Source of the DNA: Obrimoposthia wandeli
Lineage: Eukaryota
Direction of reading: 5' to 3'
Assembly (NCBI GenBank): GCA_977020255.1
Contig: CDROCS010000463.1
Location: forward strand, 372,001 to 436,000
DNA: 64,000 bases
Within the stretch, counting starts at the first letter, position 1. The number at the start of each line of letters is the position of its first letter. Positions 5,714-45,881 of this stretch are shown here, in pieces. Both the position numbers and the translations under genes were made by a program. The notes under the pieces are model-generated. The model worked only from the letters and a program-made list of their open reading frames with translations. It searched no databases and was not told the origin of the DNA.

Positions 5714-6748
<1,035 letters not shown>

Positions 6749-7547: not shown

Positions 7548-9318
7548 TGTTAGGATTAGGATTTGATAAATTTTAAATAATTAATCTAATTTATATAAAA
7601 ATAAAATCCTTGAAAGCAAGGTTATAAAACTAAATAAAAAAAAATATTTAAAATAAATTGATGAGAGTAAAAGGCAAATTAAATATTAGGACCTTGAAAG
7701 GTCATGTTCAATGTGTTATATATAAGGAGGTTGAAATTAAATAAAAGGACCCCAAAAAACAAAGTTTGAAAGAAGAGAATTTAGAAGTTAAGAAAAAAAT
7801 AAGTTAATTAAACGAGAAAAAGGACGAAGAAGAAAATCCAATTAGAGAAAATCAAGAAGAAGTCCATTAGCGACCGACGGGAGGACAGCAATCGAGCAGC
7901 AAAGAAACGACAAACCCATTAGCAGTCTGGGAGCCACGACAAATCAAACAAGAAACACTCACCTAATCTCCGAGAATCGAGCAGCAAGAGGCGACAGATC
8001 CATTAGCATCAGCAGACGGAATCCAGCCACGAAGGTAGGAGCACTTAGCTTAAGTGCAAGTGATTAATTTATTTTAGGAAAACTGCGACAGGAAAATTGA
8101 AATAGCCTCACTGGCCGAGAGACATATAAAAGCGAGTGACGCTTTCAAGGAGACGCACAAAAAACATAGAAATATTCAGCAGTCATCGCCACGCAAAAGC
8201 TCCAGAAGTCGAACAGCGGAGATTGTATTATAAATTCTCATCTGACGAAATTGTGAATCCTCATCTGACGAAATCTAGCGAGACCGGACGTCAATTTATA
8301 CGGAAACGAGGTAAGAGGAGGACGTGGTATAGTAAATTAACTAGTTTTGAATCTGAAATACCCCATATTTAAAGTTTGAAAGTCAGGAAAGATATATTAA
8401 TTTAACCAATTTTGAATCTGAAATACCCCATATTTAAAGTTTGAAAGTCAATAAAGATATATTAATTTAACTAGTTTTGAATCTGAAATACTCCATATTT
8501 AAAGTTTGAAAGTCAGGAAAGATATATTAATTTAACTAGTTTTGAATCTGAAATACCCCATATTTAAAGTTTGAAAGTCAAGAAAGATATATTAATTTAA
8601 CTAGTTTTGAATCTGAAATACCCCATATTTAAAGTGTGAAAGTCAAGAAAGATATATTAATTTAACTAATTTTGAATCTGAAATACCCCATATTTAAAGT
8701 TTGAAAGTCAAGAAAGATATATTAATTTAACTAGTTTTGAATCTGAAATACGCTGATAATCGATAAGAAAATATATTCATATTTTAGAGTGGTTACCCTA
8801 TATAAAATCAACCATTAACTGTCATATTTTAGAGCAACAAGCTCTCTAAACTCATTTCCTATTTTAGAGCAAAAAGCTCTCTAAACTCATTTCCTATTTT
8901 AGAGCGACAGCTTTGTAAAATCTATAAACTTAAATTGCCCGCATTTTTAGAGTAAAGACTCTAGCGCCCAACCAACCCTAAACTTAAAATCGATACGTGG
9001 ATCATCCCCACTTGTGTAGAGACTTACAGAAGTCTTAGGAATTTTATTGTAACTTTTTAGAATACGTACTTAGACGTATTAATTCGTGTTAGTCTAGTGT
9101 GTTTAATAATAAACGATTTCCTACAACTAGAAAGCATTGTTCTAAACCCTTCAGATTAAGACAAAACAACAAACCTTCAGATAAGAATTGAGACAGGCAA
9201 GCATAACATTAAGTAGGCCACAACCATCTACAAGTCCTTCTTCTATAGAACTCACGTTGGGGCCCTCCATCTAAAGAGGATCTATATTAGAACACAGTTT
9301 CATATAGAAACCCCAACA
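7548..9318 (+). mobile_element. Solo LTR (Ty3/Gypsy-like) with 4-bp TSD GAGA
   Basis: TGTTAGGATTAGG...GAAACCCCAACA flanked by GAGA at 7544-7547 and 9319-9322. TATA-like TATAAAA near 8125. Confidence 0.92.
8339..8750. repeat. 65-bp minisatellite (about 6.3 units) inside the solo LTR
   Basis: Unit AACTAGTTTTGAATCTGAAATACCCCATATTTAAAGTTTGAAAGTCAAGAAAGATATATTAATTT. Confidence 0.95.
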
Positions 9319-12300
9319 GAGATATGTCTTATTGATTTTATTTGCCAACCTAATGCAATCAAGCCTGAAGTTCAGTTATCCGAAATCTTCCCTAAACTAT
9401 TGTGGTGTGATTTAGATCTTAAAGTAGCCAGTTAAGCCAATTCAAATCTGAACCGAGACTACAAAAATTGGGAATTATAAGCCAGACGACTCTGCTGCGA
9501 ATCGATTTGTCTGGTGTACAGAATATGTCGCTTTTAGGCAGGTTGAGTCTCAACCTTGTTACAAATGTTTTAGTTCCTATTAACTCTCAGGGTGTAACGC
9601 GTCTTTGATTAAAACGAGCAGTATTTGCTTATAATTTATTTAGTCTAAAATTAACACTACTTAATACAATAGCATTTTGAATCACCAATTTCTATGATAC
9701 AACTTACACACAATCATATCGACAGGTGAATTCTATAAGTGGCGACACTAACGTTTTAACAATCCTTTGGCTAATCTATAAGAGTGATGTATAGATCTGC
9801 AAACCATATTTTAATAATGTTAGTGAGACAATTCAATGATAATCTCCAATCTTTACTTCTAATTCACTTCTAATCCACCAAATTTAATTAAAATAAACTT
9901 AGTAAATTTCACCATATTAATTGAATTCACAAAATACTATTCAAATCCAATGTTTAAATTCGGGATAATAAAAATCAAAATCAATTTTTGATTCAATACT
10001 TTAATTCGTGGAAGTGCTACAATTAATTATTTACTGTGTTGAACTTGTGTTTTAGATCGATCACCTGGATAAACTGCGTTAAATATATACCCGATACTGT
10101 CTTAAATACCGTGTGTTGAATTGTGGGTGAATCTTGATCATTCCTTCGATGCGACACTGGGTGCCTGTGGTTCAATGACTGGATATAAGGCCGGATGTAA
10201 CTTCTATGTTGTGTGTTAATTATCTCGTAATTACAGTCTCAGTTGAGTGAATTATTTCAAAATATACAATCTCAGTCGTTTGCAATTCTCATTGTTTTAA
10301 CTTCTTTTAGCGAATTTCATCAGGGCTCTTTTTATTTTCACTGTTATTCTTATGGATTCTTACACATTTTCAATGCATATCAATGAAATAATTTTTTCTA
10401 AACTTCTACTATTTTTCCATGTTTATTCCTAATTTATTTTTAAAATTTTATTATTTTAATTCTAAAGTAAGGTTATTTTATTTACTATAAATAACCGATT
10501 TTAATATTCTTATTTAATATTTTTCTTCATCTTGGCTGCACTTTCTTCGCCCACATTTCCATTAGCATAATTACTGTAAGAAATATCATTGCCATTACTA
10601 TCAATCATTTTACTAGTGTTATCAATTTCTCAGTTAACTGGTGATTGTTATTTTCCTTGTTTTTTATATACTATTTTGAAATCTGACGTTCGTTTTCAGT
10701 ACGTGAGTTGTGATTTTTTGATTTCTAAGAGTTTTTGTTCTTGGGGTACTCATTCAAGTTTTATCATTATCGAGATTTCGTTTCTAGTGGAATTGTTCAT
10801 TTTGCTATTTTCTTCTCAATGGTTAGACTTCAGTTCTTTCAAATTCGTTAAACTGCCCTGATCATGATACCAAATTTACTGAATCTAGTTGTTTGGTAAT
10901 CCAAGTTTAGATAGTACATGTGATTTTGTTGTTCACTTGATAATACAATGATCACAGTATATGTTCTTCTATCATTACTAAGTATTTGACTACACGTCCA
11001 TCTGGTCTCGTTTGTTTGTCTCACAACTTTAAATAGTAGTGTCTATCTTTCTTCAGTGTTCTTTCTGGGACATGCTAAAATTTCTTGCTCGGTATTTTGT
11101 AATCGGAAATATATGGCAACCGAGTTATTTGATTCCATATTGAGTTTTAGTAATTGTAATTTTGTCGACGATTGTCCAGTTGCGTTTATCATCGGGTATT
11201 AGCATAGTTCTGGCTCAAGTGACTTGAATAATCTTTTTTTCTTGGTAATGGTGATTTGAAATGTATAACTTTTTCGTTCCCTATTAAGCTAAGGGGAGTG
11301 TAAGTTAAGCCTTATTGTTATGGTACGTATGAAATGTGTAGGATTCAGTTCTCGATTGTAAACTTTTATTTCTGTAGTTGAGTAGAGGGATGTGCCTCTT
11401 TCAGGACAAACCCCACTCCCTAAAAACCAGTGCAAAAATTGTTTTCAAAAATATTCTGTCAAACTATTGCTTAGGCAACAGTTTCTATGCCGTTATTATA
11501 TATCATATGTATTTTATTTAAATAGGAATTTTATCCATTGTTTTTTTAGCGAAAATTTGTTTTAACGCATCAATGAAATCAATTAGGTCGAGAAGAGTAA
11601 ATAAGAAATTTTTTTAAAGTTTCATTTCATTATTTAAAAAATGTATTACAAGAGAGAAATTTTATTGAAAAAGCTCCCGAACAGCGAGAAGCACTTTTTA
11701 GAAGAGAAGTGCTATCTCGCAGAGGATGGATGCTCCAGGAGTCTCTTGAAGTAAAAATGATCCCGGGCTTCATTGGTTGGTTTCCAAATGGTCAATCACC
11801 TATACTGCCACATAGAAACTGGCAGTTAGACCTTAGCATGGACACACAAACGAGTCTTCATTAGGGCTACAAAAGAAAGGGATGAGAGGGACTCTAATTT
11901 TTTGTTAGAGTTTTTGGAAAAAATAGTTTTAAAATGTTATATATTAAAAAATTAACTTTAGCTACTTACTTTTAAAAGTAGCTAACTATCTACTTGTAAA
12001 AAATTAATTTCTTATTTTATTTATATTAACTACTCATCAAAATAAGTATTATATAATTACCAAAAGTTAATTTCATATTTTCAAATTTGGGTTTTTAGAC
12101 TGTTTACTGAAATATTTTGTACCAAGATATGCACTAGAAACCTTTTTAAGTGCTGTGAATGCTTTATGTAATCCTACAAAAATATCAAGCAAACCATTCC
12201 CCTTTTCCCCATTTCATCTTCAATATATTCCATATTATTTTCAATTTTAGAGCATTCGTATTAACTCCATCAAACCATCTACTTAAAAGATCCCCTACTA

Positions 12301-12494
12301 TAAAGGGAACACTCCCACTCTTCATCATTTTTTTACCCTTTTAGTATTTAATGATTTAGAAGTAGCTTTTTTACTCATTTTCTTATTAAATATTATTAAA
12401 TTATTACTATTGTTTATAAAGAAGAAAATAAAGATAGAAATATATATATTTTAAAATCAACTCTAACTGATTTAATTATTTTCGATATTGGAGT

Positions 12495-14165
12495 TGTTGA
12501 GGGTTTCTATATGAAACTCTCAGATATAGATCCTCTGATGGAGGCCCCCAATGTGAGATCTATAGAAGTAGGGCTTGCAGTTGTTTGTGGCCTACTTAAG
12601 TTTGGGCTTACTTGTCTCAATTTTTATCTGAAGGTTTGTTTTGTCTAAGTGTGGTGGGTCTGTAACAACGCTGTTTAGTTGTAGGAAATCTTTATTCTTT
12701 AACACACTAGTTACGTTCTAAAAAACGTTCTAAAATGACAACAGCTTATCCTAAATACTTTTCCCAAAGTGGGGACGTTTCGCGTATCGATTTTAATTGA
12801 GGGTTTTTAGTTCGATAGAGTCTTTACTCTAAAAATATTGGCGATGCATTTTTAGTTGATTTTAGTAGAGTTGGTTGCTCTAAAAATATGGGCAAGTTAA
12901 GTTTGTTGATTTTAGAGAGCACTCACTCTAAAATATGGGCGGTTAGTTTATTGGTTTTATGCAGAGTAAACACTCTAAAATATGGGCAGTTAGTTTATTG
13001 GTTTTAGTAGAGCTGGTTGCTCTAAAAATATGGGCAATGTAAGTTAAATAAGATCTTTATTTTAACGTAGTTTTTTAACTCAATTTCTTAAAAAATGGAC
13101 AACATAAATGGTTTCCAACTATGCAAAATGCAAAAACTCTTTTACTTCACAATGCTAACTCTTTATAAACTTTAATTTGCCAAACTCTTTCAACTTCAAA
13201 TGCAAAATGCAAAAACTCTTTTAAAACAAACGTGTTTTTCTTTTAATATAACTCACAAAATCAATGTGCTTTCTTTTACAAAAAAACCTTTTAAAACAAT
13301 TTTCTTTTAATATAACTCGCAAAATCAATGTGTTTTCTTTTACACGAAAAACCTTTTAAATCGTTCTCACCTCTTTGCGGCGTTTTTTATTAGTCCCGTT
13401 GGTTCCTCGTTGCTTCCTTGCGCGTATTTCTTGATGGACCTCGTGATCCGATATTCCAGCAAGCTGTATTCAGATTCTCCTGAATTCGGAAATAATGAAC
13501 TCTCCGATTTATTCTCTCACCTTTGTTGTTGATCTTGTTGTAATTCAGCTTCTCAGTTTAATCACGAAAATGGACTTCTTCAATTGTGTTTCTCCAGAAT
13601 TTCTAGCGAGTCTTGTTAATTATGATTTTCTGAATTTTCTAGCGAAAATCACCAATTAAAATTCTTTCATAATATAATTTTTTACCTCTCTTCTTTCCTG
13701 GACACTAATGGAATTCTGATTAGTTTTTCTTTATGGCTCCAAATCTACAGGTTACCGGCGGCTTGATTCTCAGAGGCACTAATTCTGCTAAGTGCTTTTG
13801 TAGACAAATTCGGAGTGCTTTTGTAGACGACTAATGCACGCTCTGTCTACCTGCTGCTTGGATCTCCTGGATGGTAATTGTACTCTTTGGCTCGCTGTAC
13901 TTTTCTTGGGTTAACGGTATCATCTTTTCTTTATTTCTGGTTAATTCGCTAATTTTCTTTTTGGAAAAGTTAATAATTTAAACTTTCCCTTATATACTCA
14001 CACAAGAAACATGACCTCTAAGGTCCTAATTTTATTCAATCCCATTTCTTTTATTTTACATTTTTAATTAATTATTTTATTTTATTTAACCTTTCTTTCA
14101 GGGTTATCTTTCTATGTATATATATATATATATTAATTAATTTTTACTAAATCCTAATCCTAACA
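12495..14165 (-). mobile_element. Solo LTR (Ty3/Gypsy-like) with 4-bp TSD GAGT, inserted into the Polinton relic
   Basis: TG...CA termini with GAGT at 12491-12494 and 14166-14169. The flanks rejoin to match the uninterrupted ORF near 18150. Confidence 0.92.
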
Positions 14166-15009
14166 GAGTCACCAATCCCGAGGGTCCGATCTTATAGCAT
14201 TTTGTCCTTTGATTATGAATAAGATTTCTTGAAGCTTATATTTGATCCCGAATTGATAGAAAAGATTATTGATTATCTCTTTATCCACTGAAGTCAAATT
14301 TGATACTTGAAAATCATATTTAATCGACTCTATATTGATGGGGAAAATTATAGTTATGAGATTTCTTCAAAAAATGCATATCATATCCGTGATATTTATG
14401 CAAGATTGATATAGCTTTTCTAAATTCAGATTCTCAAAATTCATATTTACAATTTAAAATTCAAATATTCAATTGTTTATCCTCTAAAGATCGATTTTAA
14501 TTGGTTAACAATGTTGTTTATGAAACTCGTTTAGTATTAGTTAAATCTCTAAAGGGCTCACGTTCTTCTATTTCTCGTGAAGAACTTGTTGTTGTTTCAG
14601 TTGATAGATTAATATTTTAACTAAGATTATTTCCCAATATCAAGAAACAATATTCTATATTATGGATTATATTGATGGAAAGAAGATCAATTTAGTAAAA
14701 CGAATGTTTCCAAATTACAAAATTGTGAATTATAATAAGTTTCAAAAATTTAAAGAAAATGCCAAAAAATATTCGATGTCCATTTAGAAAACACGGAAAA
14801 CATCATGCTTATTTCCTTTCGGTTGGTGTGCGCACACAGGATGAGTCAGGTGGACTAGAATCTATCCTTCCACCTACTGGCAAAGCCTAAAAAAATCAAT
14901 AAGAAAAAGAAGTGAATTAATCAAGTCTGTAGTTCGAAGTAAAAGAAAACTTAAATGATTTCGAATATAAACAATAATAAACATGAACTTTTTTATATGA
15001 AGAAAGTAT

Positions 15010-15322
15010 AAAAAAGCATACTCTATTTCAAAGCTTTGATGAAAGCTTCTTCTCATAAGAGAATGAGTATTCTTAAAGCATTTTCATCTTTTGTTGCAGA
15101 TGCTTTATTGGAGGTTTGTATAATATAGTTTTGGGTCGAGTAAAAATTGGAAAACGGGAAAATGTATTAAAGAAATATAGAAAATCTCGACTAGATATTT
15201 TTAATGTAAAAAAAGAAGGAAAATGAAATATTATTCTTAAACATAATGGTGCTTTCATAGGAGCTGTTATACCGGCTTTTGCTTCAATTATTAGTAGTAT
15301 TATAGCTGCGACACGTATATAA
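15010..15322 (+). pseudogene. Decayed Polinton/adintovirus-type small basic protein with a hydrophobic C-terminal tail
   Basis: Across one frameshift and one stop it reads YFKALMKASSHKRMSILKAFSSFVADALLEVC/YNIVLGRVKIGKRENVLKKYRK...IILKHNGAFIGAVIPAFASIISSIIA. This resembles, from memory, the conserved small Maverick protein ending ..QxGGFLxxLxxxxxSxxxxL. Confidence 0.6.
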
Positions 15323-16124
15323 ACAATTATTTCTAAAATCACTAAAGATATGAGTACTAAGCCTTCTTTACCTAAATTTAAATTTTCTATAAATTCAAAT
15401 TGTTGTAATGGACAAGATTGGGTTCAATCCAAAAGAACCAATTGGCTACATAGGAGTTTTAAAATTGGTTAAAAGAACAAAACATAATTACGAGAAAACG
15501 GAGAAATGGCTGAGCGATCAGTTAGACTACAGTCTGAACAACTGAATTCCATCATGCCAAATAAGGAAATCGTATTAGTTTACCTGCTATGTTTCAGACA
15601 CTTAAACGGCCACAGGTAGGTAAATGAAGTATTATTTTTCAATTTTACACTCAATAACTGATAATAAGTTTCAAAATACTGCAGACACCGTCCAATTTCG
15701 TGAAAGAAACTTTAAAGTGAGTTAAACAGACAAGTTAACCGGTTAGAACAGACCAAGCTACACAAGATCGAGTAATAAAAATGCCCAAATCATTGAAGAG
15801 ATGCTAAAGCAACAAAAGACTATCAAGATAAACAAGTCAGAAAATTCTTATAAATGTATAACAGAACTTTGTTGTTAACTTTTGTAATATTTTTTAGATA
15901 TATTAATATGAGTTATTTCATCCTGAACAAATTTCAGTCATATAAAAGTCAGCAATTGTTGTATTAAATAAAGAGGTGGTCTGAAATTCAAATTCGTCAG
16001 ATTGTTCAGTCAATAGGACCTTCTGAAACAAGGAAATACAGCTGATTTAGAAGTCGATAATTGTGACAGATGGAAGTGATGAGATACAGCGAAGTTATTA
16101 TAAAATGACCGTCACAAAGGGTCG

Positions 16125-16294
16125 TCACACAAAAACCTTGACAACGGCATCAGCACCAGCAGTAGCAAAGTAGGGCAGACTGGGGTGTACAATTATAGCG
16201 TGGATGGCCTCATCAAACTTCTTGCGGTGAGTTGTCGTTTCTTGGATACATGCCTGTGAGGTGAGATCCCACACACGCACTGAGCAGTCGTGAC
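16125..16294 (-). CDS. STRN: Striatin exon 9 (last; terminal WD40 repeats)
   Basis: SHDCSVRVWDL...HRKKFDEAIH...AGADAVVKVFV* is the striatin C-terminus. AG acceptor at 16295-16296. Confidence 0.95.
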
Positions 16295-16839
16295 CTATTT
16301 TGCGGGAGAAATGTATGTCAATAGCGTATTCATCGTGTGTCATAAGAAGGGCAACCTATTTTCTGCAAAAAAATAATCAACATTTCTGCAACGAATTTTT
16401 GTATTTGCTGCAGTTTACAACATTCTACATTAATTAAAATAGTTTAAAACTTCTATCATCTCCCAACATTGTTTTTAACTATCTACATATGTACAGCAGA
16501 GTTGGCAATATAACATATTATTTGACGATATACTAAATTCATGTTTATACAAGAAAAATACTTTTTTGATAGAACCTTGATTAGAAGAATTTAATTTTTA
16601 AATAAACATTTGAATATTATGTTCTTTCTAAATATTGAAATTTTTTACAGTTTTTTCCTTCTTTGTTTGTATTTATTTACTACCACATAAAACATAATAC
16701 TTAATTATAAAAATATTAAACGTAAACTTGAGAAAAGTAATTCAAAACAATTTAATACATGTTAATGTTTCAAAATGCATAGCGAACAAATATTTTGAAA
16801 TTCTGCAAATTTTCTGATTTTTACCCTAGTAATAAAGTT

Positions 16840-17664
16840 AGTAGGTAGATGTAGCACTTCTGGAACAAAGCCCCCCCTCCTGAGGACAAGTTCAGGTCAA
16901 GTTGAGGACAAAAAATCTAGGTCAAGTTAAGGTCACGGTGAGGACACGATGTAGGTCATGACCTCATAAGGTCATGGGGAAAATCTAGGTCATGACCTCA
17001 TGAGGTCATGACCCCCCACTATGCTCAGGAAAAAATGCCTTTGTCCTGAAAGACACACATACAGTAGTGAGATGTGTGTCTTTCAGGACAAAGACATTTT
17101 GAGCATACCCACCCCCTTGAGCACAGTTTAAGGTCACGATGAGGACAAGATGTAGGTCATGACGTCATGAGAACAATGTACTTTAAGGTCAACTTAAGGT
17201 CATGACGTCATGAGGACAATGTACTTTAAGGTTACGGTGAGGTCAAAAAGATGACTCATCGATGACTCATATTCTATTTTTAGTAACATACTTTAAATCT
17301 ATATATCTTTTTATCTAACGGTGGTATTAACACGCCGTCTTCACCAAAAGACATCTCGTGTGTGTGTGTTTAAGCTTATATAATTTATTTAAATTAAATT
17401 ATCTACTTATAAAATAAAGTATTATAAATTTGATAAATATGTTTAAACTAAATTAAATTAAACTATCTACTTATAAAATAAAGTAGTATATAATTTGATA
17501 ATAATGTTTAGACGTTCGTGTATCTATCTAACAAAGACAGTCACGTACTGCATCTATCTTGCAAATACTTGCATCTTTATGTAATCAATAGTAACAAGTC
17601 ATGTACGACATTTATTATTATACATGTATATATGTGTGTGAGTGTCTAACAAAGACAGTCACGT
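16840..17664 (+). repeat. Left terminal inverted repeat
   Basis: Reverse complement of 21785-22702 apart from tandem-unit copy number and scattered substitutions. Confidence 0.95.
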
Positions 17665-18046
17665 ACTGCATCTATATTGCAATGTAATTACATACTCTTT
17701 GGAGGTTTTACTAAAAAGTTTAGTTTTTTACCAAGATAGGCACTAGGATCCTTTTCAAATGCTTTTACAACTTTATCTAATTTTACAAAAATATCAAGCA
17801 TACCATCCCCTTTTGTATACCATCTCCTTTTTGAAATCCATTCCCATTTTGTATACCTCTAATATAATCCACATTCTTTTTGTGCTTTATAGCTTTTTTA
17901 TCAACTTCACCAAACCATCTACCTAAAAGATTTGCTGCCATCATATGAATACCCAAACCTTCCATGATTTTCTTTTTACTCATAGTCTTTTTAACCTTAG
18001 TCTTTTTCGACTTTAATGATTTAGTAGGTTTTTTAGTCATTTTCAT
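17659..18046 (-). pseudogene. Lys-rich core-protein-like ORF with repeated xxGxG motifs (one frameshift)
   Basis: MKMTKKPTKSLKSKK...MEGLGI...QNGNGF.QKGDGI.QKG(D)GM. The frameshift is near 17810 and the restored frame continues LDIFVKLDKVVKAFEKDP. Confidence 0.55.
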
Positions 18047-18113
18047 AATAAATATTATTATTAAAGTATCACTATTGTTTATATATAAAATAAAATAAAG
18101 ACACAAAAATTTA

Positions 18114-18452
18114 TTAGTCAACTGTAACAGCATCAATTATTTTCCATATCGGAGTTTCCAATCCACTGGGTCCGATCTTGCATCCTTGAATTCTGATTGA
18201 GAGAATCCATTCTAGCTTAAGAGGAGGTACTTCGTATATTGTTCCATTCTCATGCTTGAAAGTGGCATTTGATCCTTTGAGTACGAATTTGTTATCCTGA
18301 AGCGCATAGTTGATTCCGAATTGAGTCAAGAGAATATTGATTCTCTCTTTATCCACAGAAGTCAAATTTGATATTTCAAAATCAAATTTAAGCGGCTCGA
18401 TGTTGACGGGAAAAATAAAATTATAGTTATGAGCCTTCTTCAAAAAGTGCAT
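18114..18452 (-). CDS. Hypothetical protein of the Polinton-like element (112 aa)
   Basis: Open ORF with a recognisable homologue in the relic (14166-14400 plus 12440-12494). No family recognised. Confidence 0.55.
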   Translation of the reverse strand: MHFLKKAHNYNFIFPVNIEPLKFDFEISNLTSVDKERINILLTQFGINYALQDNKFVLKGSNATFKHENGTIYEVPPLKLEWILSIRIQGCKIGPSGLETPIWKIIDAVTVD

Positions 18453-18572
18453 CTCATATAATATGTATGCATAGGTTGATATAGCTTTTCAAAATTCATA
18501 TTGACAATTATAAATTGAAATATTCAATTGTTTATCCTCTAAAGCTCGATTCTAATTGGTCAATATTCTTGT

Positions 18573-18701
18573 TTATGAAAATCGTTTAGTATTAGTCATA
18601 TCCTTAAAGGGTTTACGTTCTTCGGTTACGCGCGTAGGACTTGTTATTGTTTGACTTGATGGATTAATATTTTCTCTCTGATTATTTCTATTATAATTCA
18701 T
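18573..18701 (-). CDS. 42-aa micropeptide with a D-box-like motif (RKPFKDMTN)
   Basis: ATG-to-stop ORF. The homologue in the relic (about 14518-14620) reads EEREPFRDLTNTKRVS, so the motif is conserved at protein level. Confidence 0.45.
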   Translation of the reverse strand: MNYNRNNQRENINPSSQTITSPTRVTEERKPFKDMTNTKRFS

Positions 18702-18933
18702 ATAAATTACTACCGGAACCTATAAATGTACTAGCTTTACTTTGATTATTTTGATTATTTTGATTATTTTGATTATTCATTTTCAATAAAATCATTATCA
18801 AAATATTGTTTATACTGCTTTATTCTTAAGACAAAGACATCACATGACATTTCTTGTAAAAACCAAGAATGTGGTCTAAAAATAGATTTTCACTTACTAT
18901 ATAAGCTAGATAATTTCATCATTCAATGTTGTT

Positions 18934-19921
18934 ATGACTACTAAATTTATTGCATATTATGTTTCAGAAAACGGAGAACTCACCATTAGACGACGGCGTT
19001 TTGACAAGATTTCAAGAAGAAAGGAAGATATGATATATGAGCGACATAGATTAGATACATACAAGCAAAGTTTACTGGTTTAGCAGATAAGAGAGCTTTA
19101 GCAAAAAGAGGATTTTACAAGCACGATGATTCGAAAGATAATGTAAAGTGTATTTACTGTCTGGGAGCAATATCGGAATGGGAGTACTATCTGAATCCAA
19201 TGAAGCGGCATCAGTTATTTTTCCCAAGATGTCAGTTTGTTTAGAAAATGAACGTTTCAAACGTACCAATAATTGATTACAGCACCAAACAAATTGATTT
19301 TGATTCAACTCCAATGGATAAAGTAGTTATTGTACGCAATAATTATTCTAATGATATTGAAATACCTACATTATCGATTTTCGATCATGTATATATTTGG
19401 AATGATTCTTATCGATGTTGTTTCTGTCAGAAAGCAGTACCCCGACTTGAGTTTATTGATACTATGCCTGAAAGAATCTTTCATACTCGAGATTGTAAAG
19501 CATCTAGTATGGGAATCAAGAACGGATGTATTGTGGAATATCATATTAGTAATGATGAAATTGATGCTCAGATGGAAACTCGTCAAATAGTTTTGCTGAA
19601 ACGGGATTATAGTCATGATAGAATCAAAGCCGTTTTAGTTAATAGATTTAAAACATTCGGTAACAAATATGATTCTATATATGAGTTTATAACGGATTTA
19701 AGGTCTTTAGAAATAAAATCTGAACTAAAACATCGTATAAATTATCTCGAGTACCTCTTACCAAATCCCGAATGTGTTGTTTGCATGAGCGATGCGATTT
19801 CCGTGGCATTTTTACCATGCGGTCACTTAAACACGTGTATTAAATGTTCAGATCGTTTTATTACATGTCCATATTGACAATTATCATTAGAAGAGTAAGA
19901 AATATTAGATTTCATAGCATA
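18934..19921 (+). pseudogene. Inhibitor-of-apoptosis (BIR plus C-terminal RING) gene, disrupted
   Basis: BIR: RLDTY../..LAKRGFY..DNVKCIYC..ISEWE..PMKRHQLFFPRC. RING: CVVCMSDAISVAFLPCGHLNTCIKCS..TCPY. One frameshift near 19068, an in-frame TAG at 19242 and stops at the RING end. Confidence 0.9.
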
Positions 19922-20002
19922 GGCAATTAAACAAAGACATGCAATCTAAAAATAGATGTTCAAATAGTATAAATATAAGAAATCAGTTTATAATAATCAG
20001 AA

Positions 20003-20538
20003 ATGCTACTTCACAATATCAAATTAGTGAATATTAATTACAAGGGAATAGTTGTAAGTAACATTCAACACTTACCATTTCGGACTTCGAAGCCTCATCA
20101 GTATCGACTCAAGTGTGAAGGTTACACTATTATCATTTTCAAATCTGGTAATTTATTTTTACATTTATATATAATTATAATTTAGGGACATGCAGAATAA
20201 TGGGTTGCAAAACAGTGCTGGATGAAAACAGTCTTCCTTTTGATATAAAAATCGAAAGAATCCAATCAATCAGTCTCAGTAGCAATCTAGAAACATCAAT
20301 AAACCTGAACAAGATGAGTAAGAGTATGGGATCGGAAGCTGTTTACGAGCCAGAAATCTTCCCGGGACTTCGATACATCAAATACAATCCACTATGCGTG
20401 AACATTTTTGCTAGCGGGAAGATTATGATACTCGGTGTTAAATCTTTAAACTATGAGTATCTGATTGAATGTATTTTGTTTAATATAGATCTTCACACTT
20501 GTGTTATTTATTTCCTAAACCAAATAGTCGTGGTCTAA
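20003..20538 (+). CDS. TBP-like protein, 165 aa; exons 20003-20147 and 20186-20538, 38-bp GT-AG intron
   Basis: Splicing gives IIIFKSGTCRIMGCK (TBP repeat 1). Exon 2 has YEPEIFPGLRY...NIFASGKIMILGVK (TBP repeat 2). The frame is preserved across the intron. Confidence 0.88.
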
Positions 20539-20700
20539 AAATAGATTTATCTTAGAGACAAAGACATCACATGTCATTACTTGCAAATAGTTGCAAATAG
20601 TTGTAATGTGGTCTAAAAATAGATTTATCTTAGAGACATAACATGTCATTACATGCAAATAGTTGCAAATAGTTGTAATGTGGTCTAAAAATAGATTTTT
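20528..20700. repeat. ~75-bp tandem repeat (about 2.3 units) containing TCTAAAAATAGA
   Basis: GTGGTCTAAAAATAGATTT occurs three times, with CTAAAAATAG at 20535, 20613 and 20685. Confidence 0.9.
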
Positions 20701-20739
20701 CATGGGTTATAAACAATATTTGATTTGCTTTATCATAAA

Positions 20740-20983
20740 ATGGATGAAATTATTGAATGTAAAGAGGTTCAGTATGCATTAAAAGATCTTGCTTCAGTTA
20801 TTCTTAATGCTTTAATTAGGAAAAATAATCATGAGTAATATTTATTTGTAGTTTATTTAACTCTTTAGGTTACGTCATCAACTACATTTACATGAGATGT
20901 TAAGTACAATGGAAAGGTTGAATAATACTCCAATCAAATCATATGATGAAACTGATGCTCCAATGAAATCAAACCTCGTTTAG
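20740..20983 (+). CDS. Putative 69-aa spliced ORF; exons 20740-20834 and 20869-20983, 34-bp GT-AG intron
   Basis: GTAATA...CTCTTTAG intron. Removing it joins two short frames into one ATG-to-stop ORF. No family recognised. Confidence 0.4.
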
Positions 20984-21016
20984 TATATAAGAGTAAATTG
21001 ACTCAGATTTGATAAA

Positions 21017-21679
21017 ATGGAGAAAATCAATTCAGCACCAGCAGCAACATCATCGCCAACAACATCATCACTGGCAGCAACATCATCGCCAGCAACAACA
21101 TCATCGCCAGCAACATCATCACTGGCAGCAACACTATCAGCAGCAACATCAGCAACAACAACAACATTTATGAGAAGAGAAGAAACTATTGATGAAGTGA
21201 TGATAGAAGAAGTTATTATAGATCCGATTATTGAAGATAAGAGACGATTAGATTTTTTAAATGCTTTGGCTTTTATGGAACCCATTATAGCTCATGCTGG
21301 TCGTATGGAAATGAACCATATGACCCATCTTTTTGATAGTTTGTTTAGTGCTAGATTTACTCAACTTAATGTAGAAAAGTTAAACAAAACAAAAATGAGT
21401 GAGATTTTAGTAAATCAATTATATATTGGTAATTATCGAGATGGGTTTGATGAAACTACACTTTTGAACTCTAATTTCACTCATGTAATCAATACATCTA
21501 TACTGGATAAGATATCTTATAAGAAATTAAAATATACTTCTGTCTTTGTAAACTCAAAATTAGGAGAAACAATAATGAGATATTATAAACAGACTAATAA
21601 TATAATTAAAGAAACTATCGAAAATGGTGGTAAGATTTTAGTATGTGGTCATTATAGTAGGTGGATGTGTCCGGTCTAA
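21017..21679 (+). CDS. Dual-specificity-phosphatase-fold protein with an Ala/Thr/Ser-rich N-terminus; probably catalytically dead and C-terminally truncated
   Basis: MSEILVNQLYIGNY..THVIN..YYKQTNNIIKETIENGGKILV follows the DUSP pattern. The P-loop reads VCGHY instead of VHCxxG. Confidence 0.78.
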   Translation: MEKINSAPAATSSPTTSSLAATSSPATTSSPATSSLAATLSAATSATTTTFMRREETIDEVMIEEVIIDPIIEDKRRLDFLNALAFMEPIIAHAGRMEMNHMTHLFDSLFSARFTQLNVEKLNKTKMSEILVNQLYIGNYRDGFDETTLLNSNFTHVINTSILDKISYKKLKYTSVFVNSKLGETIMRYYKQTNNIIKETIENGGKILVCGHYSRWMCPV

Positions 21680-21784
21680 TCCACACACCCCCTTGTCCTT
21701 TAAAACCGTGCATGTGTGTGGAGTGAAATTTCGTGTAGGTGTGTGGAGTGAAATTTCAGTATTGATACTGTCTTTGTTAGACAC

Positions 21785-22702
21785 ACGTGACTGTCTTTGT
21801 TAGACACTCACACACATATATACATGTATAAGAATAAATGTAGTACATGACTTGTTACTATTGATTACATAAAGATGCAAGTATTTGCAAGATAGATGCA
21901 GTACGTGACTGTCTTTGTTAGATAGTTACATGAACGTCTAAACATGATTATCAAATTATATAATACTTTATTTTATAAGTAGATAGTTTAAGTTAATTTA
22001 AACATATTTATCAAATTATATAATACTTTATTTTATAAGTAGATAATTTAAATAATTTATATAAGCTTAAACACACACACACGAGATGTCTTTTGGTGAA
22101 GACGGCGTGTTAATACCACCTTTAGATAAAAAGATATATAGATTTAAAGTATGTTACTAAAAATAAAATCTTTTTGACCTCACCGTAACCTTAAAGTACA
22201 TTGTCCTCATGACGTCATGACCTTAACTTGACCTTAAAGTACATTGTCCTCATGACGTCATGTCCTTAACTTGACCTAAAAGTACATTTTCCTCATGACG
22301 TCATGACCTTAAGTTGACCTTGAAGTACATTGTCCTCATGAGGTCATGACCTACATCTTGTCCTCACCATGACCTTAAGTTGACCTCATGAGGTCATGTC
22401 TTCATCGTGACCTTAAACTGTGCTCAAGGGGGGGGTATGCTCAAAATGTCTTTGTCCTGAAAGACACACATCCCACTACTGTATGTGTGTCTTTCAGAAC
22501 AAAGACATTTTTCCTGAGCATAGGGGGGGGTCATGACCTCATGAGGTCATGACCTAGATTTTCCCCATGACCTTATGAGGTCATGACCTACATCGTGTCC
22601 TCACCGTGACCTTAACTTGACCTAGATTTTTTGTCCTCAACTTGACCTGAACTTGTCCTCAGGAGGGGGGGCTTTGTTCCAGAAGTGCTACATCTACATA
22701 CT
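21785..22702 (-). repeat. Right terminal inverted repeat
   Basis: Mirror of 16840-17664 with extra copies of the CATGACGTCATGACCTTAACTTGACCTTAAAGTACATTGTCCT unit. Confidence 0.95.
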
Positions 22703-22922
22703 AAGGTTAATTCTAAGGTTAAGATTTAAAGTTATAGTTATAAATTAAAGAAAACTTTGATAACATTAGATTAAGAAAACGTAAATAAGTAATAGAATGA
22801 ATTATGAAAATTTGAATGAAAGAGTTTTTGTTGCATTGCAAGTTATTTTTCTAAATTATTTTGCATGTAATGTAAATAAAGGATCAACCTTATTGTGTAC
22901 GTTATATAGATAAATATTTTTT

Positions 22923-25900
22923 CTTGTATATAATGAAATTTAAACGTGAAGTAACACAGTTGTATCGTGTTTCATTGTAAGATGTCAGAACCTATACCGA
23001 CGGACTGGAATACATTACCCGACGACCATTTTAGGAAAGGAGAAAGTACCTTTAAGTACGATTTTGTTAATGCCAAGATAGCAAGTTTCTCTCTCAACAT
23101 CAGGAAACAAGACCAAAATTGCAATGAGATAACGTCCTTGTTAAACAAGATACTGGAAGCCAGTACCATGCCTACTGCATGAAGAACCTTCAGGATCAAG
23201 TTTATTCCAAAATCCAGAAACGATTCTTATGGCGACATTTCTGCGTGTAGATCAATTGCGGTTATGAGTTGTCTTTATAAAGTACTGGCAAGTGTTATTG
23301 CTTCTGATCTACGGAACTGGCCATGGAAAGAAAAACTTCTGCATCCATCTCAAAAGAGCATCGGCATGTTTGAGGGCTGTTTTAAACACAATACATTACT
23401 CTATCTCGTCTCCAATAAGTGTCACAGAAACAAAAAATCCTGACATGTTACATTCCTAGATATCGCTGATGCCTATGGATCAGTGCCCATAGACTTCATC
23501 GTGGGAATGATGTTGAAGGTTAACATTTCTGAGAATATGTATAAACTTGTACACAATATCTACGAGGAGAACAAAACCGACATACAATGTGGAGAAATTA
23601 AGATTAAAGATATACCCATTAAGAAGGATGTACGCCAAGGTTGTCCATTGTCGATGATTATATTTAATTTCTGTATTAATCCCGTCATTGAGGCAGTAAA
23701 CAAAGTATCCAACGCTGGGTTCAAGCTTGGTTCTACACATTTTGCTACCCTAGCATATGCAGATGATCTTGTCTTACTCGCTGAGGACAAATCAAGAAAA
23801 AATCAAGGAGATCTTACTCGATGGAGACCCTATACCTGCAGTAACGGAAGATAGTGTCTACAGATACATAGGTATGAACAGGAATGCAGATTCAAAACAC
23901 AAATGCGAGAATCTATTTGAGGGGAATCTTGACATGATAACGAAGATCATGAACAGTATACTGATTATATTTAATATCTGTATTAATCCCGTCATTGAGG
24001 CAGTAAACAAAGTATCCAACGCTGGGTTCAAGCTTGGTTCTACACATTTTGCTACCCTAGCATATGCAGATGATCTTGCCTTACTCGCTGAGGACAAATC
24101 TGTACTGAAGATGATGGTGGATACTGCAGCAGATACTGCAGCCAGGATTCAATTGAGATTCAGACCTAGCAAATGTTGAATACTCACAAGGTATACTGAG
24201 GGGCAGCAATAGTAGAGATGCAAAGAAAGAAATCAATGAGATCTTACTCGATGGAGACCCTATACCTGCAGTAACGGAAGATAGTGTCTACAGATACATA
24301 GGTATGAACAGGAATGCAGATTCAAAACATAAATGCGAGGATCTATTTGAGGGGAATCTTGACATGACAACGAAGATCATGAACAGTAGACTGTATCCTC
24401 AACAGAAAATCTCGGCGTACAAAAGCTTTGTACATTCCAAGTTTGTATTCAGTTTCAGGCAAAACAACATATCCTACGACAGATTCACCAATGTTAGATG
24501 TACTAAAGGAGTAACAAAATACGCTTATGACTGGCAAGTAAAGAAACAACTCCGAAGAATTGCAGGATGACGGAGGATTCGATATCCCAAGTATCACGGA
24601 AGAGTATAATATACAGGTCATAATTAAGGTCTTCAAAATGACGAATGCAGACCGTGGGGGATTACAACAATCATTTAGACTTGAACTAATCTCCTTAGTA
24701 AGTAAACGAATCCCAGAAAGCAGATACTTTTGGAATTGCCTGGCCCAAGCCGTAAATGAAAAACCCATTCAAGCAACGGACAGAAATTAGTGGGCAAGGT
24801 ATACTGAGGCTTACAAGAAAATCAAGAAGGAGTTGAATCTCGAAATTATAATCTACAGAGGGGCTACAGATGGTGAAAATTATGAAGTAGTAATTTGCAT
24901 TAAGGGTAATGTTAATACCGTACTCACAAGCGACGATAACAAAGGAATTAGTGCTAATTTCCACAAACAGATCGCAATTGCTAGGACTGAGCATCTAAGG
25001 ATTAATGATAAACCTGGATCAGTGATTTGTGGAAATGCTAATCTGATACGGACATTAACAGGTTTATCCTCACTCATAAAGCATGGTACTTTATACAAAA
25101 AGCCCAAAAAGAACGCTTGGGGGTTAAAGCGCTATATAGTTAGCGTGAAGTTAACTGTTACCGATATGGGTGTAAAAGAAACAACAAACCATCTCCCGAG
25201 ACGGTATCCCGAGACTTGCCCTAAATGACGGAGATACTATTGCCATGGAAGAAACTACTATGATAATGGATGACAGAGACAATATTCAGCGAGCAAGACC
25301 AGATATTACGGTAAAAGGTAGAACCTACATCCACTATGTGGAAATTAAAGTTCCCTTTGACAGTAATATGAGTCAAAATAATAGTTACAACAAAGCAATG
25401 GACAAATATCAGAATCTAGTCGAGACTACGCGAAAAGATAATAGTTAAAAAATGGTAGAACTCTATGTCATTAAAGTAGGGATTCTCGGGTTCTGGAATA
25501 CTGACAACCAACTTGTCCAGGCTTACAAATATTCAGCTGCAGAAAGAAAGAAGATTAACCTGATCGAGTAGATGCTCTGGCTGCCAACAAGTTGGAGGGG
25601 ATTGAAAAGTGGATGTATGTATTATGAAAATAAATTACTTAATTAAAATTTCTGGACAATAATTTTTGGAAGAAATTGAAATACCAGATAATATAATATT
25701 TACTTTTCCAATACTCTGGAAATAATCAGAAAATGCAGTCACAACCTGGAAACCACCAAGCAATGTCGCACAAACAATCTCCCAGGAGATTCATCGGTCC
25801 TACATGAAGTAGAAGACACCTTACGGTGTATTGCTAAAAGGAATTTAATTCCCTGCATGTGTTTACTATGAATATAGCTTTCTAATATAATATTATATTG

Positions 25901-25967: not shown

Positions 25968-26831
25968 TTATAAACTAAAAATTAAAGCCAATAGTACAAA
26001 TTCGCGGTGATCGTACAAGATTTAGGGGCATCACACATTGAAAACTTCACAAGTATTAATCTTAACAGAACATGTATATAGGATTAAGGGGGATACATGT
26101 ATGTACTGTATAAACACGGCTATCTTCATTTTCGAGACAGCTTGGTTTGGTTCGTAACAAAGACGCAGAGACTTGTGACAGCGCCCAAACGAAGGAAGAC
26201 CTTGCCATCAACTATTTTGAGCTTCTTCTATGAGTCTGATAGGCGCTGAATACCCGAATCTTCTCTAATGCTTCCACTCAATCATTGAATGAAGCGAGGG
26301 TCACCAGCTCTTCGGAAATGTAGTTAAGGTAGCGAATGATAGCATTGCTGACTGGTTTCTATAAATTCCTTTGAGAGTACACTCACATGCCACAAATAAA
26401 GTCCAATTCATTCTCCGGAGCAAAATAGGAAATCATCGAAATAGTCAGTCCTTGATGTCTTTTTTCTATGGTAGGCTAGGGACTTATTGAACGTACCACG
26501 TAAATGAAACTCACAAAGATGGCCACCTCGTAAATACCCTAGGCTTGTTAGGGTGTCAACTCCAATTGGTCCTTGAAAAAGACCGCATTGGAAAGAGCAA
26601 CAGGTGGAATAATTTAACGAAACCCTCGATGACATTACGAAAAATGGAACCAAAATATAAGCGACCATCATGAAGTGTAGTTCAAAGGGTGTTTAAGGTT
26701 TAAAAAGGAAAAACCAGCAATTCTGATTTGATGGACTTGCCGAAAGGTTTCCCAAACCTTGCACACTTCGTAGCAATTCTCGATCATGGCACGAAAATGT
26801 AAAAAGAAGAGGATAAAGAAAAGGGACTCAC

Positions 26832-27041
26832 TGGCACTGAGGAGGTGGTGTGACCCGGACTTGTGCTCGAGGGCCAGGCCTGTGACTGCCCCGAGGTGAG
26901 CAGCGAGCGAGGACACTAGCTGACCGGACACCAGGTCAAACAGACGGATATGTCGGTCTTCGTGGCCACTGATCACAAGACCTCGTCCCGGGTGCTCAAT
27001 CAGCTGGTGAATGTGGCTGCCCATCGACTGGCCACTGTCAT
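26832..27041 (-). CDS. STRN: Striatin exon 8 (WD40)
   Basis: HEDRHIRLFD...AHLGAVTGLA. AG and GTGAGT boundaries, phase 1/1. Confidence 0.93.
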
Positions 27042-44726: not shown

Positions 44727-45062
44727 GAAATTTGATACGTAAGCCGGTCTGTTCACCAGACACCTAATGTTAGTTTCAGGCAATCTCAGAAAACCAATAA
44801 ATCATTATAAAGTTGCAGAGAATTAAAGAAAAATTCATTTTTTAACCTGAAATTTTCCCTTCACTCAGATATTTAAAGTTTACACTGCTCTGAAATGAAA
44901 TTTGATACGTAAGCCGGTCTGTTCACCAGACACCTAATGTTAGTTTCAGGCAATCTCAGAAAACCAATAAATCATTATAAAGTTGCAGAGAATTAAACAA
45001 AAATTCATTTTTTAACCTGAAATTTTCCCTTCACTCAGATATTTAAAGTTTACACTGCTCTG
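44727..45062. repeat. Two-copy ~170-bp tandem duplication
   Basis: GAAATTTGATACGTAAGCCGG...TACACTGCTCTG at 44727 and 44897. Confidence 0.95.
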
Positions 45063-45881
45063 TGTAAATGTACAGGGTGCTGAGAAAGTTCCCGATCAAA
45101 TTTTGAAAATTGAATTAAATATATTATTATTTAACTAAATTTATCCATTTTTGGCTTATTTTGTTTGTAGATACATATATTTATGTTTCAGATCCAAATT
45201 TCCTAAAATTTAATTAGTATTTGTATATTTCATTGGTGAAGAAATGATATTGGGATTGAGAAATGTGGATTATCTGTACAGCATTGAAACGATTTTAGGA
45301 AATATTTTCATAATAACGGATGTCAGTTTAGAAGCAGCTAAGCTAAGTTGAGGCTCTAAGCCATACAATGTCTCACAGGAAGCCCTTCCAATTCCTGAAT
45401 GAAGTTGTACGCACAGAATCTTTCCAATATATTTTTAAAAATACATAAGAAATATCTAATGAACACAGAATATTTTCAAAAAAAACATTTGAATAACCAG
45501 AATCAGGCATTGCCGATATTAGCTGAAAATCACACCGACAAGCAGACACACATAAGCGACCTGATAACATTTATGTTATGACATTAAGAGAGGAAGAGTT
45601 GCAAAAGCTATCCAATAATCAAGAAGACCGAATATTTAAAAATTATTGTACAAATAAGTATAATATTATAACACTGTATCTCGAATTGACAGAATATAGG
45701 CACGTATAAAACTATATTGAATAGTTTCCCATTTATGAAAAACTAGAAAGAGTGCCTGCGTGAAAGTTTGATAATGTGTAGTATAACATTAGATTCTGGT
45801 GCTTTATAAATATATCTTATCTTATACATCAATTTATAGTACAATGATAAATTATAATCCACGTATTCAAAATGTTTTTAG

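What the first reader, a model, noticed from the sequence alone, without database searches (positions are those of the whole stretch)
16840..22702. Mini-Polinton: 5.9-kb non-autonomous virus-like element carrying a host-control cassette
Seen: AGTA...TACT ends, ~0.85-kb TIRs, a 6-bp TSD (5/6 match), and between them IAP, TBP-like, DUSP-like, core-protein-like and several small ORFs. No polymerase, integrase, ATPase, protease or capsid gene is recognisable. Established: Polintons/Mavericks have AG...CT ends, long TIRs and 6-bp TSDs, are normally about 15-20 kb and encode pPolB and integrase. Inference: a helper-dependent satellite or genome segment specialised in apoptosis, transcription and signalling control, mobilised in trans. 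The alternative is a one-off internal deletion.
Basis: partly seen in the sequence, partly recalled or inferred. Interest (0 to 1): 0.9.

Follow-up and report, generated by a model that had tools for sequence, protein, structure and literature searches.

The report
Decayed internally deleted Polinton (Maverick) copy
A 5.9-kb piece of an animal genome is the decayed, shortened remnant of a Polinton/Maverick virus-like transposon that kept both long end repeats and its accessory genes but lost all replication, integration and capsid genes; this is an ordinary fate for such elements.

Summary
The inverted repeats are 843 and 918 bp and 97.7% identical. The ends read AGTA...TACT, and the flanks AAAGTT/AAGGTT match 5/6. 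Inside are a BIR+RING (IAP-like) gene, a TBP-like gene and a DUSP-like gene. There is no core gene.

The Polinton origin is now supported by homology. The TBP-like gene, a neighbouring 112-aa ORF (fold like T7 gp2.5 ssDNA-binding proteins, tentative), the RING protein and the DUSP all have relatives on metagenomic contigs. Those contigs also carry a protein-primed PolB, an rve integrase and an A32-type ATPase.

In full-length relatives these genes form the ordinary left-arm accessory block. They are therefore not a special host-control cassette. Four of the five genes here are broken, with at least six lesions.

One copy cannot tell a deletion in place from a short form moved in trans. A second, older remnant of the same family lies 2 kb upstream (11.9-15.5 kb) and keeps integrase and p106 fragments.

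Best reading: a dead internal-deletion derivative of a Polinton (about 0.72). A trans-mobilised satellite family remains possible (about 0.17). The TSD is ambiguous, and "core-protein-like" is unsupported.

The parts
16834..16839 (.). Left candidate target-site duplication (AAAGTT)
   Evidence: Matches 22703-22708 (AAGGTT) at 5 of 6 positions. Other boundary/TSD pairs fit about as well.
16840..17664 (+). Left terminal inverted repeat. It starts AGTAGG and holds 34- and 43-bp subrepeats rich in AGGTCA.
   Evidence: There are 15 AGGTCA/TGACCT motifs here, against 3 or fewer per kb elsewhere in the window.
17688..18046 (-). Lys-rich 'basic protein' gene, broken (one apparent frameshift); function unknown
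   Evidence: ORF pieces. A protein-level counterpart lies in the upstream remnant. No Pfam hit and no homologue in the related loci.
18114..18452 (-). Intact 112-aa ORF of a small family, here called SSB-like (possible T7 gp2.5-type OB-fold ssDNA-binding protein)
   Evidence: 21 relatives in the exhaustive search. AF2 model pLDDT 92.9. Fold matches to gp2.5-like SSBs and to giant-virus proteins. It lies next to the TBP-like gene in 20 of the 51 TBP-anchored loci and in L006-L010.
18825..18901 (.). Intergenic copy of a 68-78-bp repeat, between the divergent SSB-like and IAP-like genes
   Evidence: Families D7 and D11. The other copies are at 20530-20710.
18934..19877 (+). IAP-like gene (BIR plus IAP-type RING), broken: two premature stops and one inferred frameshift. 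The RING lacks its last zinc-ligand pair.
   Evidence: BIR PF00653, E 3e-13. RING PF13920, E 1e-9, with best PDB hits cIAP1 and XIAP RINGs. The region before the RING is homologous to the RING protein of Polinton contig L024 (blastp 1e-7).
20003..20538 (+). TBP-like gene (about 155 aa in relatives), broken by one frameshift
   Evidence: PF00352, E 5e-13. PDB TBPs. 30 relatives of about 150 aa at 41-59% identity and 51 metagenomic loci. Relatives read continuously across both pieces.
20530..20710 (.). Three tandem 72-78-bp repeats between the TBP-like and DUSP-like genes
   Evidence: families D7, D11.
21017..21679 (+). DUSP-like gene remnant. It has a Ser/Thr/Ala-rich N-terminus and the N-terminal half of the phosphatase domain. 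The catalytic loop is disrupted and the C-terminal half is absent.
   Evidence: DSPc 1e-5, below the cut-off. DUSP22 is the best PDB hit. Homologous to the DUSP on L013, which has an intact catalytic loop.
21785..22702 (-). Right terminal inverted repeat, ending ...CATACT
   Evidence: 21 AGGTCA/TGACCT motifs.
22703..22708 (.). Right candidate target-site duplication (AAGGTT)
11940..15540 (.). Older, fragmentary remnant of the same Polinton family, outside the finding. It holds basic-protein and SSB-like homologues (minus strand, 66-79% nt identity to the element), a p163-like fragment, a p106 homologue and an integrase N-terminal fragment (plus strand). All are broken or partial. An unrelated TIR element is nested at 12495-14167.
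   Evidence: blastn. tblastn with relatives' proteins: p106 up to 68% identity and E 4e-19, integrase E 3e-9. Nested element.
44992..45159 (+). Third Polinton-derived piece: a C-terminal fragment of a TBP-like gene inside a 170-bp tandem repeat
   Evidence: tblastn with relatives' TBP-like proteins, E 1e-5 to 1e-6. Tandem repeat 44727-45062.
16125..16343 (-). Neighbour: last exon of a host WD40 gene. With the exon at 26668-27024 it places the element in a host intron.
   Evidence: WD40 Pfam hits.

Best explanation
This is a dead, non-autonomous derivative of a Polinton/Maverick.

**What the parent looked like.** It belonged to a lineage whose full-length members run, left to right: accessory block (SSB-like, TBP-like, then variably RING/IAP, DUSP, E2), A32-type packaging ATPase, p106, rve integrase, three conserved virion-size proteins, and a protein-primed PolB on the opposite strand next to the right end.

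**What happened here.** One internal deletion runs from within the DUSP-like gene to about 0.1 kb inside the right TIR. It removed the whole core, roughly 8-9 kb judged from relatives. Both TIRs and the left accessory block were left.

**Decay since then.** The copy has decayed neutrally in a host intron. The arms have diverged by 2.3%. Four of the five genes carry at least six disabling lesions.

**Shown:** the structure, the gene identities, the homology to Polinton accessory genes, the absence of core genes, and the decay.

**Inferred:** that the ends were made by Polinton-type integration (rve integrase, 6-bp duplication) and that the TIRs, with their AGGTCA subrepeats, were the cis sites for protein-primed replication.

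**Undecided:** whether the deletion happened in the chromosome after integration or before it.
For: - TIRs and AGT-type ends. They fit published Maverick features: TIR 46-1447 bp, 6-bp TSD, AGT end motif (PMC8097293); TIR 100-1500 bp, TSD 5-8 bp (10.1101/2023.08.22.554363).
- TBP-like relatives sit on contigs with A32 ATPase, rve+Chromo integrase and pPolB.
- 18 of 51 TBP-anchored loci show at least one core gene, and 20 of 51 show the SSB-like gene next to TBP.
- The RING protein lies beside the ATPase in L024 and is homologous to the element's. A DUSP lies downstream of TBP in L013.
- Gene orientation in the element (SSB minus, TBP plus) matches L027 and L006.
- There are no core genes in the element.
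- Broken genes.
- Further remnants of the family in the same window include integrase and p106 fragments.
- 96% of vertebrate Maverick loci are degraded (PMC8097293), so this state is the norm.
Against: - Only one complete copy could be examined, and the assembly is not available.
- The TSD is imperfect and not unique.
- No full-length copy with the same termini was seen. Relatives are only 41-59% identical in protein and share no TIR sequence. None of their contigs carries both ends.
- The deletion ends within about 0.1 kb of the TIR edge. That is a little surprising for a random chromosomal deletion.
- The virion-size proteins of the relatives were not confirmed as capsid proteins here.
Confidence: 0.72

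Rival explanations
1. It belongs to a non-autonomous 'mini-Polinton' family. The short form arose once as a defective genome, for instance by template switching during protein-primed replication. It was then replicated and integrated in trans by full-length partners, like a satellite or defective interfering genome.
For: - Complete, near-identical TIRs with Polinton-type ends and a plausible 6-bp duplication flank the short form.
- The deletion stops about 0.1 kb from the inner edge of the right TIR and leaves both arms whole, as expected if only replicable and integrable forms persist.
- The family is multi-copy in this genome: three separate pieces lie in 64 kb.
Against: - No second copy with this structure is in the window.
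- The upstream remnant carries integrase and p106 fragments and is 21-34% diverged, so it is not a sister mini-element.
- The same structure results from a deletion in place.
- The genes are decayed, so nothing shows a selected 'host-control' function.
Confidence: 0.17
2. It is a cut-and-paste TIR transposon of another superfamily (for example one that targets TTAA) that captured Polinton and host gene fragments, in the manner of a Pack-type element.
For: - Inverted similarity continues about 19 nt beyond AGTA (13/19).
- Alternative duplications exist further out: GATT/GATT 4/4 and TTTA/TTAA 3/4.
- Another TIR element in the window (639-9318) does carry a captured-looking intronless GAPDH.
Against: - All recognisable genes are homologous to the accessory block of one Polinton lineage, in the same order and orientation. 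They are not a mix of host fragments.
- There is no transposase.
- The similarity beyond AGTA is far weaker than in the TIR proper (68% against 97.7%).
- AGT-type ends and sub-kb TIRs are typical of Mavericks (PMC8097293).
Confidence: 0.04
3. It is an assembly artefact. A full-length Polinton was collapsed or mis-joined so that its core is missing from the assembled sequence.
For: Long inverted and tandem repeats are prone to mis-assembly. Short tandem duplications lie at the junction between the DUSP-like remnant and the right TIR.
Against: - There are no N runs in the window.
- The junction lies in unique sequence, not inside a repeat shared with a core gene.
- The arms differ by 19 substitutions and several indels, as expected of two real loci.
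Confidence: 0.03

Closest known systems
Polintons / Mavericks (polintoviruses, adintoviruses)
   Same: - Sub-kb to kb TIRs, AG(T)...(A)CT ends and a candidate 6-bp duplication.
- Its genes are homologous to accessory genes that sit beside pPolB, rve integrase and A32-type ATPase in relatives.
- Degraded copies are the rule (PMC8097293).
   Different: It is 5.9 kb rather than 13-25 kb. It lacks pPolB and integrase, which define the group (PMC5499653), and lacks the whole virion module.
Internally deleted non-autonomous DNA transposons and defective viral genomes that keep both terminal repeats
   Same: Both ends are retained, the enzymatic core is lost, and any movement would depend on functions supplied in trans.
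   Different: No amplification is shown. It carries about 4 kb of accessory genes rather than being a small non-coding shell.
MELD viruses with a TBP-like gene (Starrett et al. 2021, PMC8502044, Fig. 5 legend)
   Same: A TBP-like gene sits in a midsize linear dsDNA virus-like element that has pPolB and integrase.
   Different: Whether it is the same TBP family was not tested. Those examples were reported from datasets of non-animal eukaryotes. Here the host looks like an animal (GAPDH closest to flatworms).
Transpovirons
   Same: About 7 kb, linear, with long TIRs and a handful of small genes, and dependent on a helper.
   Different: Transpovirons encode a helicase fused to an inactivated pPolB and are associated with mimiviruses (PMC5499653). 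Nothing of that kind is here.

Membership tests
Polinton/Maverick (autonomous) | [quoted passage not shown] | tested here: not met
   No hit inside 16840-22702 with PolB proteins of relatives L006, L027 and L029 or with any of their ORFs. No Pfam hit.
Polinton/Maverick (autonomous) | Encodes a retrovirus-like (rve) integrase | tested here: not met
   None in the element. An integrase N-terminal fragment exists only in the separate remnant at 15399-15539.
Polinton/Maverick (autonomous) | Virion module (capsid proteins, A32-type ATPase, adenain-like protease) | tested here: not met
   No hit in the element.
Polinton/Maverick (any copy, including derivatives) | Long TIRs (about 50-1500 bp) | tested here: met
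   843 and 918 bp, 97.7% identical. Published ranges in PMC8097293 and 10.1101/2023.08.22.554363.
Polinton/Maverick (any copy, including derivatives) | 5'-AG...CT-3' ends (AGT motif common) | tested here: met
   AGTAGG... and ...CATACT. Weaker inverted similarity continues 19 nt outward, so the end is not proven.
Polinton/Maverick (any copy, including derivatives) | 6-bp target-site duplication | tested here: inconclusive
   AAAGTT/AAGGTT match 5/6. Alternatives of other lengths fit as well.
Polinton/Maverick (any copy, including derivatives) | Genes homologous to those of bona fide members | tested here: met
   TBP-like, SSB-like, RING and DUSP relatives lie on contigs with pPolB (PF03175, E 2.8e-9), rve (E 1e-12) and A32 (E 2e-6).
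Trans-mobilised non-autonomous family (satellite) | Several copies with the same internal junction at different sites with different duplications | not testable with these tools
   The assembly is not available. In the window the terminal 46-mer occurs only at the two ends. No copy was found in public viral contigs.
Trans-mobilised non-autonomous family (satellite) | Autonomous partner with matching termini in the same genome | tested here: inconclusive
   The remnant at 11.9-15.5 kb links the same left-arm genes to p106 and integrase fragments. It is 21-34% diverged and has no recognisable outer TIR.
IAP (BIR plus RING) | BIR domain and C-terminal RING | tested here: met
   PF00653, E 3e-13. 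PF13920, E 1e-9. The gene is broken and the RING is cut short.
TATA-binding protein family | TBP fold repeat (PF00352) | tested here: met
   E 5e-13, 49 bits, above the cut-off of 22.9. PDB TBPs down to E 7e-15. The family is short (about 150 aa) and the gene here is frameshifted.
Dual-specificity phosphatase | Complete DSPc domain with catalytic Cys-x5-Arg loop | tested here: not met
   Only profile positions 1-78 of 133 match, at 25.7 bits, below the cut-off of 33.5. The loop is intact in relative L013 but not here.
T7 gp2.5-like ssDNA-binding proteins (for the 112-aa ORF) | OB-fold resembling gp2.5 | tested here: inconclusive
   Foldseek against PDB: E 0.07-0.5, probability about 0.9, TM about 0.5. 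Against BFVD: E 1e-5 to 1e-2, TM 0.5-0.7, mostly unnamed giant-virus proteins plus phage SSBs. No sequence-profile hit.
TTAA-targeting cut-and-paste transposons | TTAA duplication and a transposase | tested here: not met
   Only TTTA/TTAA (3/4) at a boundary 16 nt outside the strong TIR. No transposase.

The most novel reading that the evidence does not exclude
The 5.9-kb form is one member of an amplified family of mini-Polintons. These would be defective genomes that keep only the ends and the accessory block (ssDNA-binding-like, TBP-like, IAP, DUSP) and spread with the help of full-length partners, as a satellite of a virus-like transposon in an animal genome.
Probability: 0.15. Interest if true: 0.6.

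Novelty: new member of a known kind. Interest (0 to 1): 0.3.

Why it matters
The locus itself is an ordinary genomic fossil.

Two by-products are of modest value.
- It anchors a poorly described Polinton lineage, seen here in an animal genome and in many metagenomic contigs. That lineage carries a conserved pair of a short TBP-like protein and a possible gp2.5-type ssDNA-binding protein. It also variably carries ubiquitin-system genes (RING/IAP, E2) and a DUSP.
- It gives a diagnostic junction (DUSP remnant to right TIR). A search of the assembly with that junction can settle at once whether short Polinton derivatives amplify in this genome.

Tried and rejected
**Searches that found nothing**
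- Exact-protein look-ups for the RING ORF and the GAPDH.
- Word-based homologue search with the RING ORF.
- Scans of viral contigs with a TIR 19-mer, the TBP piece, the RING ORF and the TBP alignment.
- Rfam and tRNA scans of the window.
- Nucleotide similarity between the element's TIR and any related locus.

**Tests that could not decide**
- None of the relatives' contigs carries an inverted-repeat pair, so their termini could not be compared.
- The basic protein has no Pfam hit and no homologue in relatives, p106 included. 'Core-protein-like' is dropped.
- dN/dS between the element and the upstream remnant is 0.6-1.0 on 30-51 codons, which is uninformative.
- Sequence-profile searches of the SSB-like family against PDB, Pfam and PHROGs gave nothing. 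Only the fold comparison gave a lead.
It was rerun with permitted rows only.

**Ideas considered and dropped**
- Polydnavirus segment: it has no direct-repeat junctions, and the genes match Polinton relatives.
- Endogenous giant-virus fragment: the relatives carry pPolB, rve and A32 on contigs consistent with elements of about 13-20 kb.
- Transpoviron: there is no helicase-pPolB fusion.
- Recent capture of host genes: the TBP, IAP and DUSP are highly divergent from cellular ones and are shared with Polinton contigs.
Full report
**Setting**

The window is AT-rich (about 31% GC), repeat-rich and without N. The element lies in an intron of a minus-strand WD40 host gene, whose exons are at 16125-16343 and 26668-27024. 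A reverse-transcriptase fragment lies next to it at 23.3-25.4 kb. An intronless GAPDH elsewhere in the window has flatworms as its closest named relatives: Macrostomum 80%, Clonorchis 76%, Schistosoma 74-76%. The host is therefore probably an animal, perhaps a platyhelminth. This is an inference.

**Observation**

- *Inverted repeats.* They are real and long. The left arm is 16840-17664 and the right arm 21785-22702. They are 97.7% identical over 811 aligned columns. They differ mainly in the number of 43-bp subrepeats.
- *Subrepeats.* The arms are packed with AGGTCA-containing subrepeats: 15 and 21 motifs, against 3 or fewer per kb elsewhere.
- *Ends and flanks.* The ends read AGTAGG.../...CATACT, and the flanks AAAGTT and AAGGTT match 5/6.
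- *Caveat.* The two flanks remain 13/19 alike in inverted orientation beyond these ends, and other boundary/duplication pairs fit about as well (7/8, 4/4, 3/4). One copy cannot fix the terminus.

**Gene content**

On the minus strand, next to the left TIR:
- A Lys-rich protein gene of unknown function. It has no family hit and is apparently frameshifted once.
- An intact 112-aa ORF.

On the plus strand:
- An IAP-like gene: BIR PF00653, E 3e-13, and IAP-type RING PF13920, E 1e-9.
- A TBP-like gene: PF00352, E 5e-13.
- A DUSP-like remnant: DSPc N-terminal half, below the cut-off.

Counting lesions against relatives:
- IAP-like: two premature stops and one inferred frameshift.
- TBP-like: one frameshift.
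- DUSP-like: a disrupted catalytic loop, with the C-terminal half missing.
- Basic protein: one apparent frameshift.
- 112-aa ORF: none.

That makes at least six lesions in four of five genes. With 2.3% divergence between the arms, this much damage is what neutral decay since insertion would give. This is an inference.

**Relatives**

The TBP-like piece found 30 proteins of about 150 aa at 41-59% identity. An alignment of them found 51 loci in metagenome contigs. Their neighbours identify the lineage:
- The contig of P0018 and locus L002 carry an A32-type ATPase, an rve+Chromo integrase, three conserved larger proteins and then the TBP-like gene.
- L006, from a 20-kb contig, adds a protein-primed PolB (PF03175, E 2.8e-9).
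- L027 and L029 (12.6-12.9 kb) show the order SSB-like, TBP-like, ATPase, p106, integrase, p373, p108, p408, then PolB on the other strand.
- The 112-aa ORF has 21 relatives in the exhaustive search. It lies next to the TBP-like gene in 20 of the 51 loci and in L006-L010.
- A RING protein homologous to the element's lies between TBP and ATPase in L024. A RING protein is also present in L001.
- A DUSP with an intact catalytic loop lies downstream of TBP in L013.
- L027 also carries an E2 enzyme.

**The 112-aa ORF**

A model built from the family alignment is confident (pLDDT 92.9). Its best solved-structure matches are T7 gp2.5-type ssDNA-binding proteins (DUF2815, Enc34 SSB, gp2.5). The E-values are weak, with probability about 0.9 and TM about 0.5. 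Among predicted viral structures it matches many unnamed giant-virus proteins and some phage ssDNA-binding proteins (E 1e-5 to 1e-2, TM 0.5-0.7). No sequence-profile method supports this. A replication-linked ssDNA-binding role is plausible but tentative.

**No core genes**

All ORFs of 50 aa or more from the 61 related loci were compared with the window. Inside the element only the SSB-like, RING and TBP-like genes are hit.

**More of the family in the window**

- Upstream, 11.9-15.5 kb holds an older remnant. It has homologues of the basic protein and the SSB-like ORF (66% and 79% nt identity).
- The remnant also holds a p106 homologue (up to 68% identity, E 4e-19) and an integrase N-terminal fragment (E 3e-9).
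- An unrelated TIR element is nested in the remnant at 12495-14167.
- A third piece, a TBP-like C-terminal fragment, lies at 44992-45159 inside a tandem repeat.

The family is thus multi-copy in this genome and once included integrase-bearing members. None of these pieces is a second mini-element.

**Interpretation**

The simplest account is a single internal deletion. It runs from within the DUSP-like gene to about 0.1 kb inside the right TIR and removes the ATPase-to-PolB core. Neutral decay followed.

This fits what is known of Mavericks:
- TIRs of 46-1447 bp.
- AGT end motifs.
- 6-bp duplications.
- 96% of loci degraded (PMC8097293).

Polintons by definition encode pPolB and integrase (PMC5499653). 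The element is therefore a derivative, not a member in the strict sense.

A deletion in place and the integration of an already short form leave identical structures. The data cannot separate them. The deletion does stop just short of the TIR, which is a weak pointer towards a replication-generated defective genome. However, the locus was chosen because both TIRs are intact, which biases that observation. I put the dead deletion derivative at about 0.72 and a trans-mobilised mini-family at about 0.17. A transposon of another superfamily or an assembly artefact gets a few per cent each.

**Comparison and novelty**

A TBP-like gene in midsize linear dsDNA elements has been noted before (PMC8502044, Fig. 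5 legend). Deleted and degraded Mavericks are common. The locus is a new member of a known kind. The recurrent SSB-like/TBP-like pair in this lineage is the more interesting by-product.

2. The places of breaks can be inferred from them. I noticed this afterwards, have deleted nothing, and do not repeat those bounds here.

No repaired, joined or consensus sequence was built.

Noticed in passing
window 639-9318 (GAPDH ORF 5714-6730, minus strand): An 8.7-kb element is bounded by about 430-bp inverted repeats (89% identical). It has a second inner inverted pair (1950-2163 / 7548-7759). It carries an intact, intronless, GC-rich (47%) GAPDH ORF of 338 aa. This looks like gene capture or a retrogene inside a TIR transposon.
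   Followed up: partly
window 12495-14167: A 1.7-kb short copy of the same TIR family as 639-9318 is nested in the older Polinton remnant, between its basic-protein and SSB-like genes.
   Followed up: partly
window 5714-6730: The closest named relatives of the GAPDH are flatworms (Macrostomum 80%, Clonorchis 76%, Schistosoma 74-76%). Unnamed JGI/Logan contigs of about 1.1 kb reach 83-85%. The host is probably a platyhelminth or a near relative.
   Followed up: partly
window 44727-45159: A TBP-like C-terminal fragment of the Polinton type is embedded in a 170-bp tandem repeat. Part of a virus-like gene appears to have been turned into a short satellite.
   Followed up: no
L006 15380-15546; window TIRs: The 20-kb Polinton contig L006 ends in tandem 41-bp repeats containing GTAGGTCAAGGTCA. 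The element's TIRs are built from subrepeats with the same AGGTCA core, although the proteins are only about 30-50% identical. This may be a conserved protein-binding site in the ends of this lineage.
   Followed up: partly
L011-L061, L006-L010: A short TBP-like gene (about 150 aa) and the SSB-like gene form a conserved neighbouring pair, either divergent or tandem, at the left arm of this Polinton lineage. RING, E2 (L027) and DUSP (L013) genes vary around them.
   Followed up: yes
window 18825-18901 and 20530-20710: A 68-78-bp repeat occurs in two intergenic regions of the element: upstream of the IAP-like gene, and three times between the TBP-like and DUSP-like genes. These may be shared regulatory elements.
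   Followed up: no
window 32.8-41.3 kb and 61.4-63.8 kb: Units of about 3.86 kb are repeated in tandem and again 22 kb away, at 90-100% identity. Their nature was not examined.
   Followed up: no
window 23264-25448: A reverse-transcriptase (non-LTR type) remnant with an internal duplication of about 430 bp lies directly right of the element.
   Followed up: no
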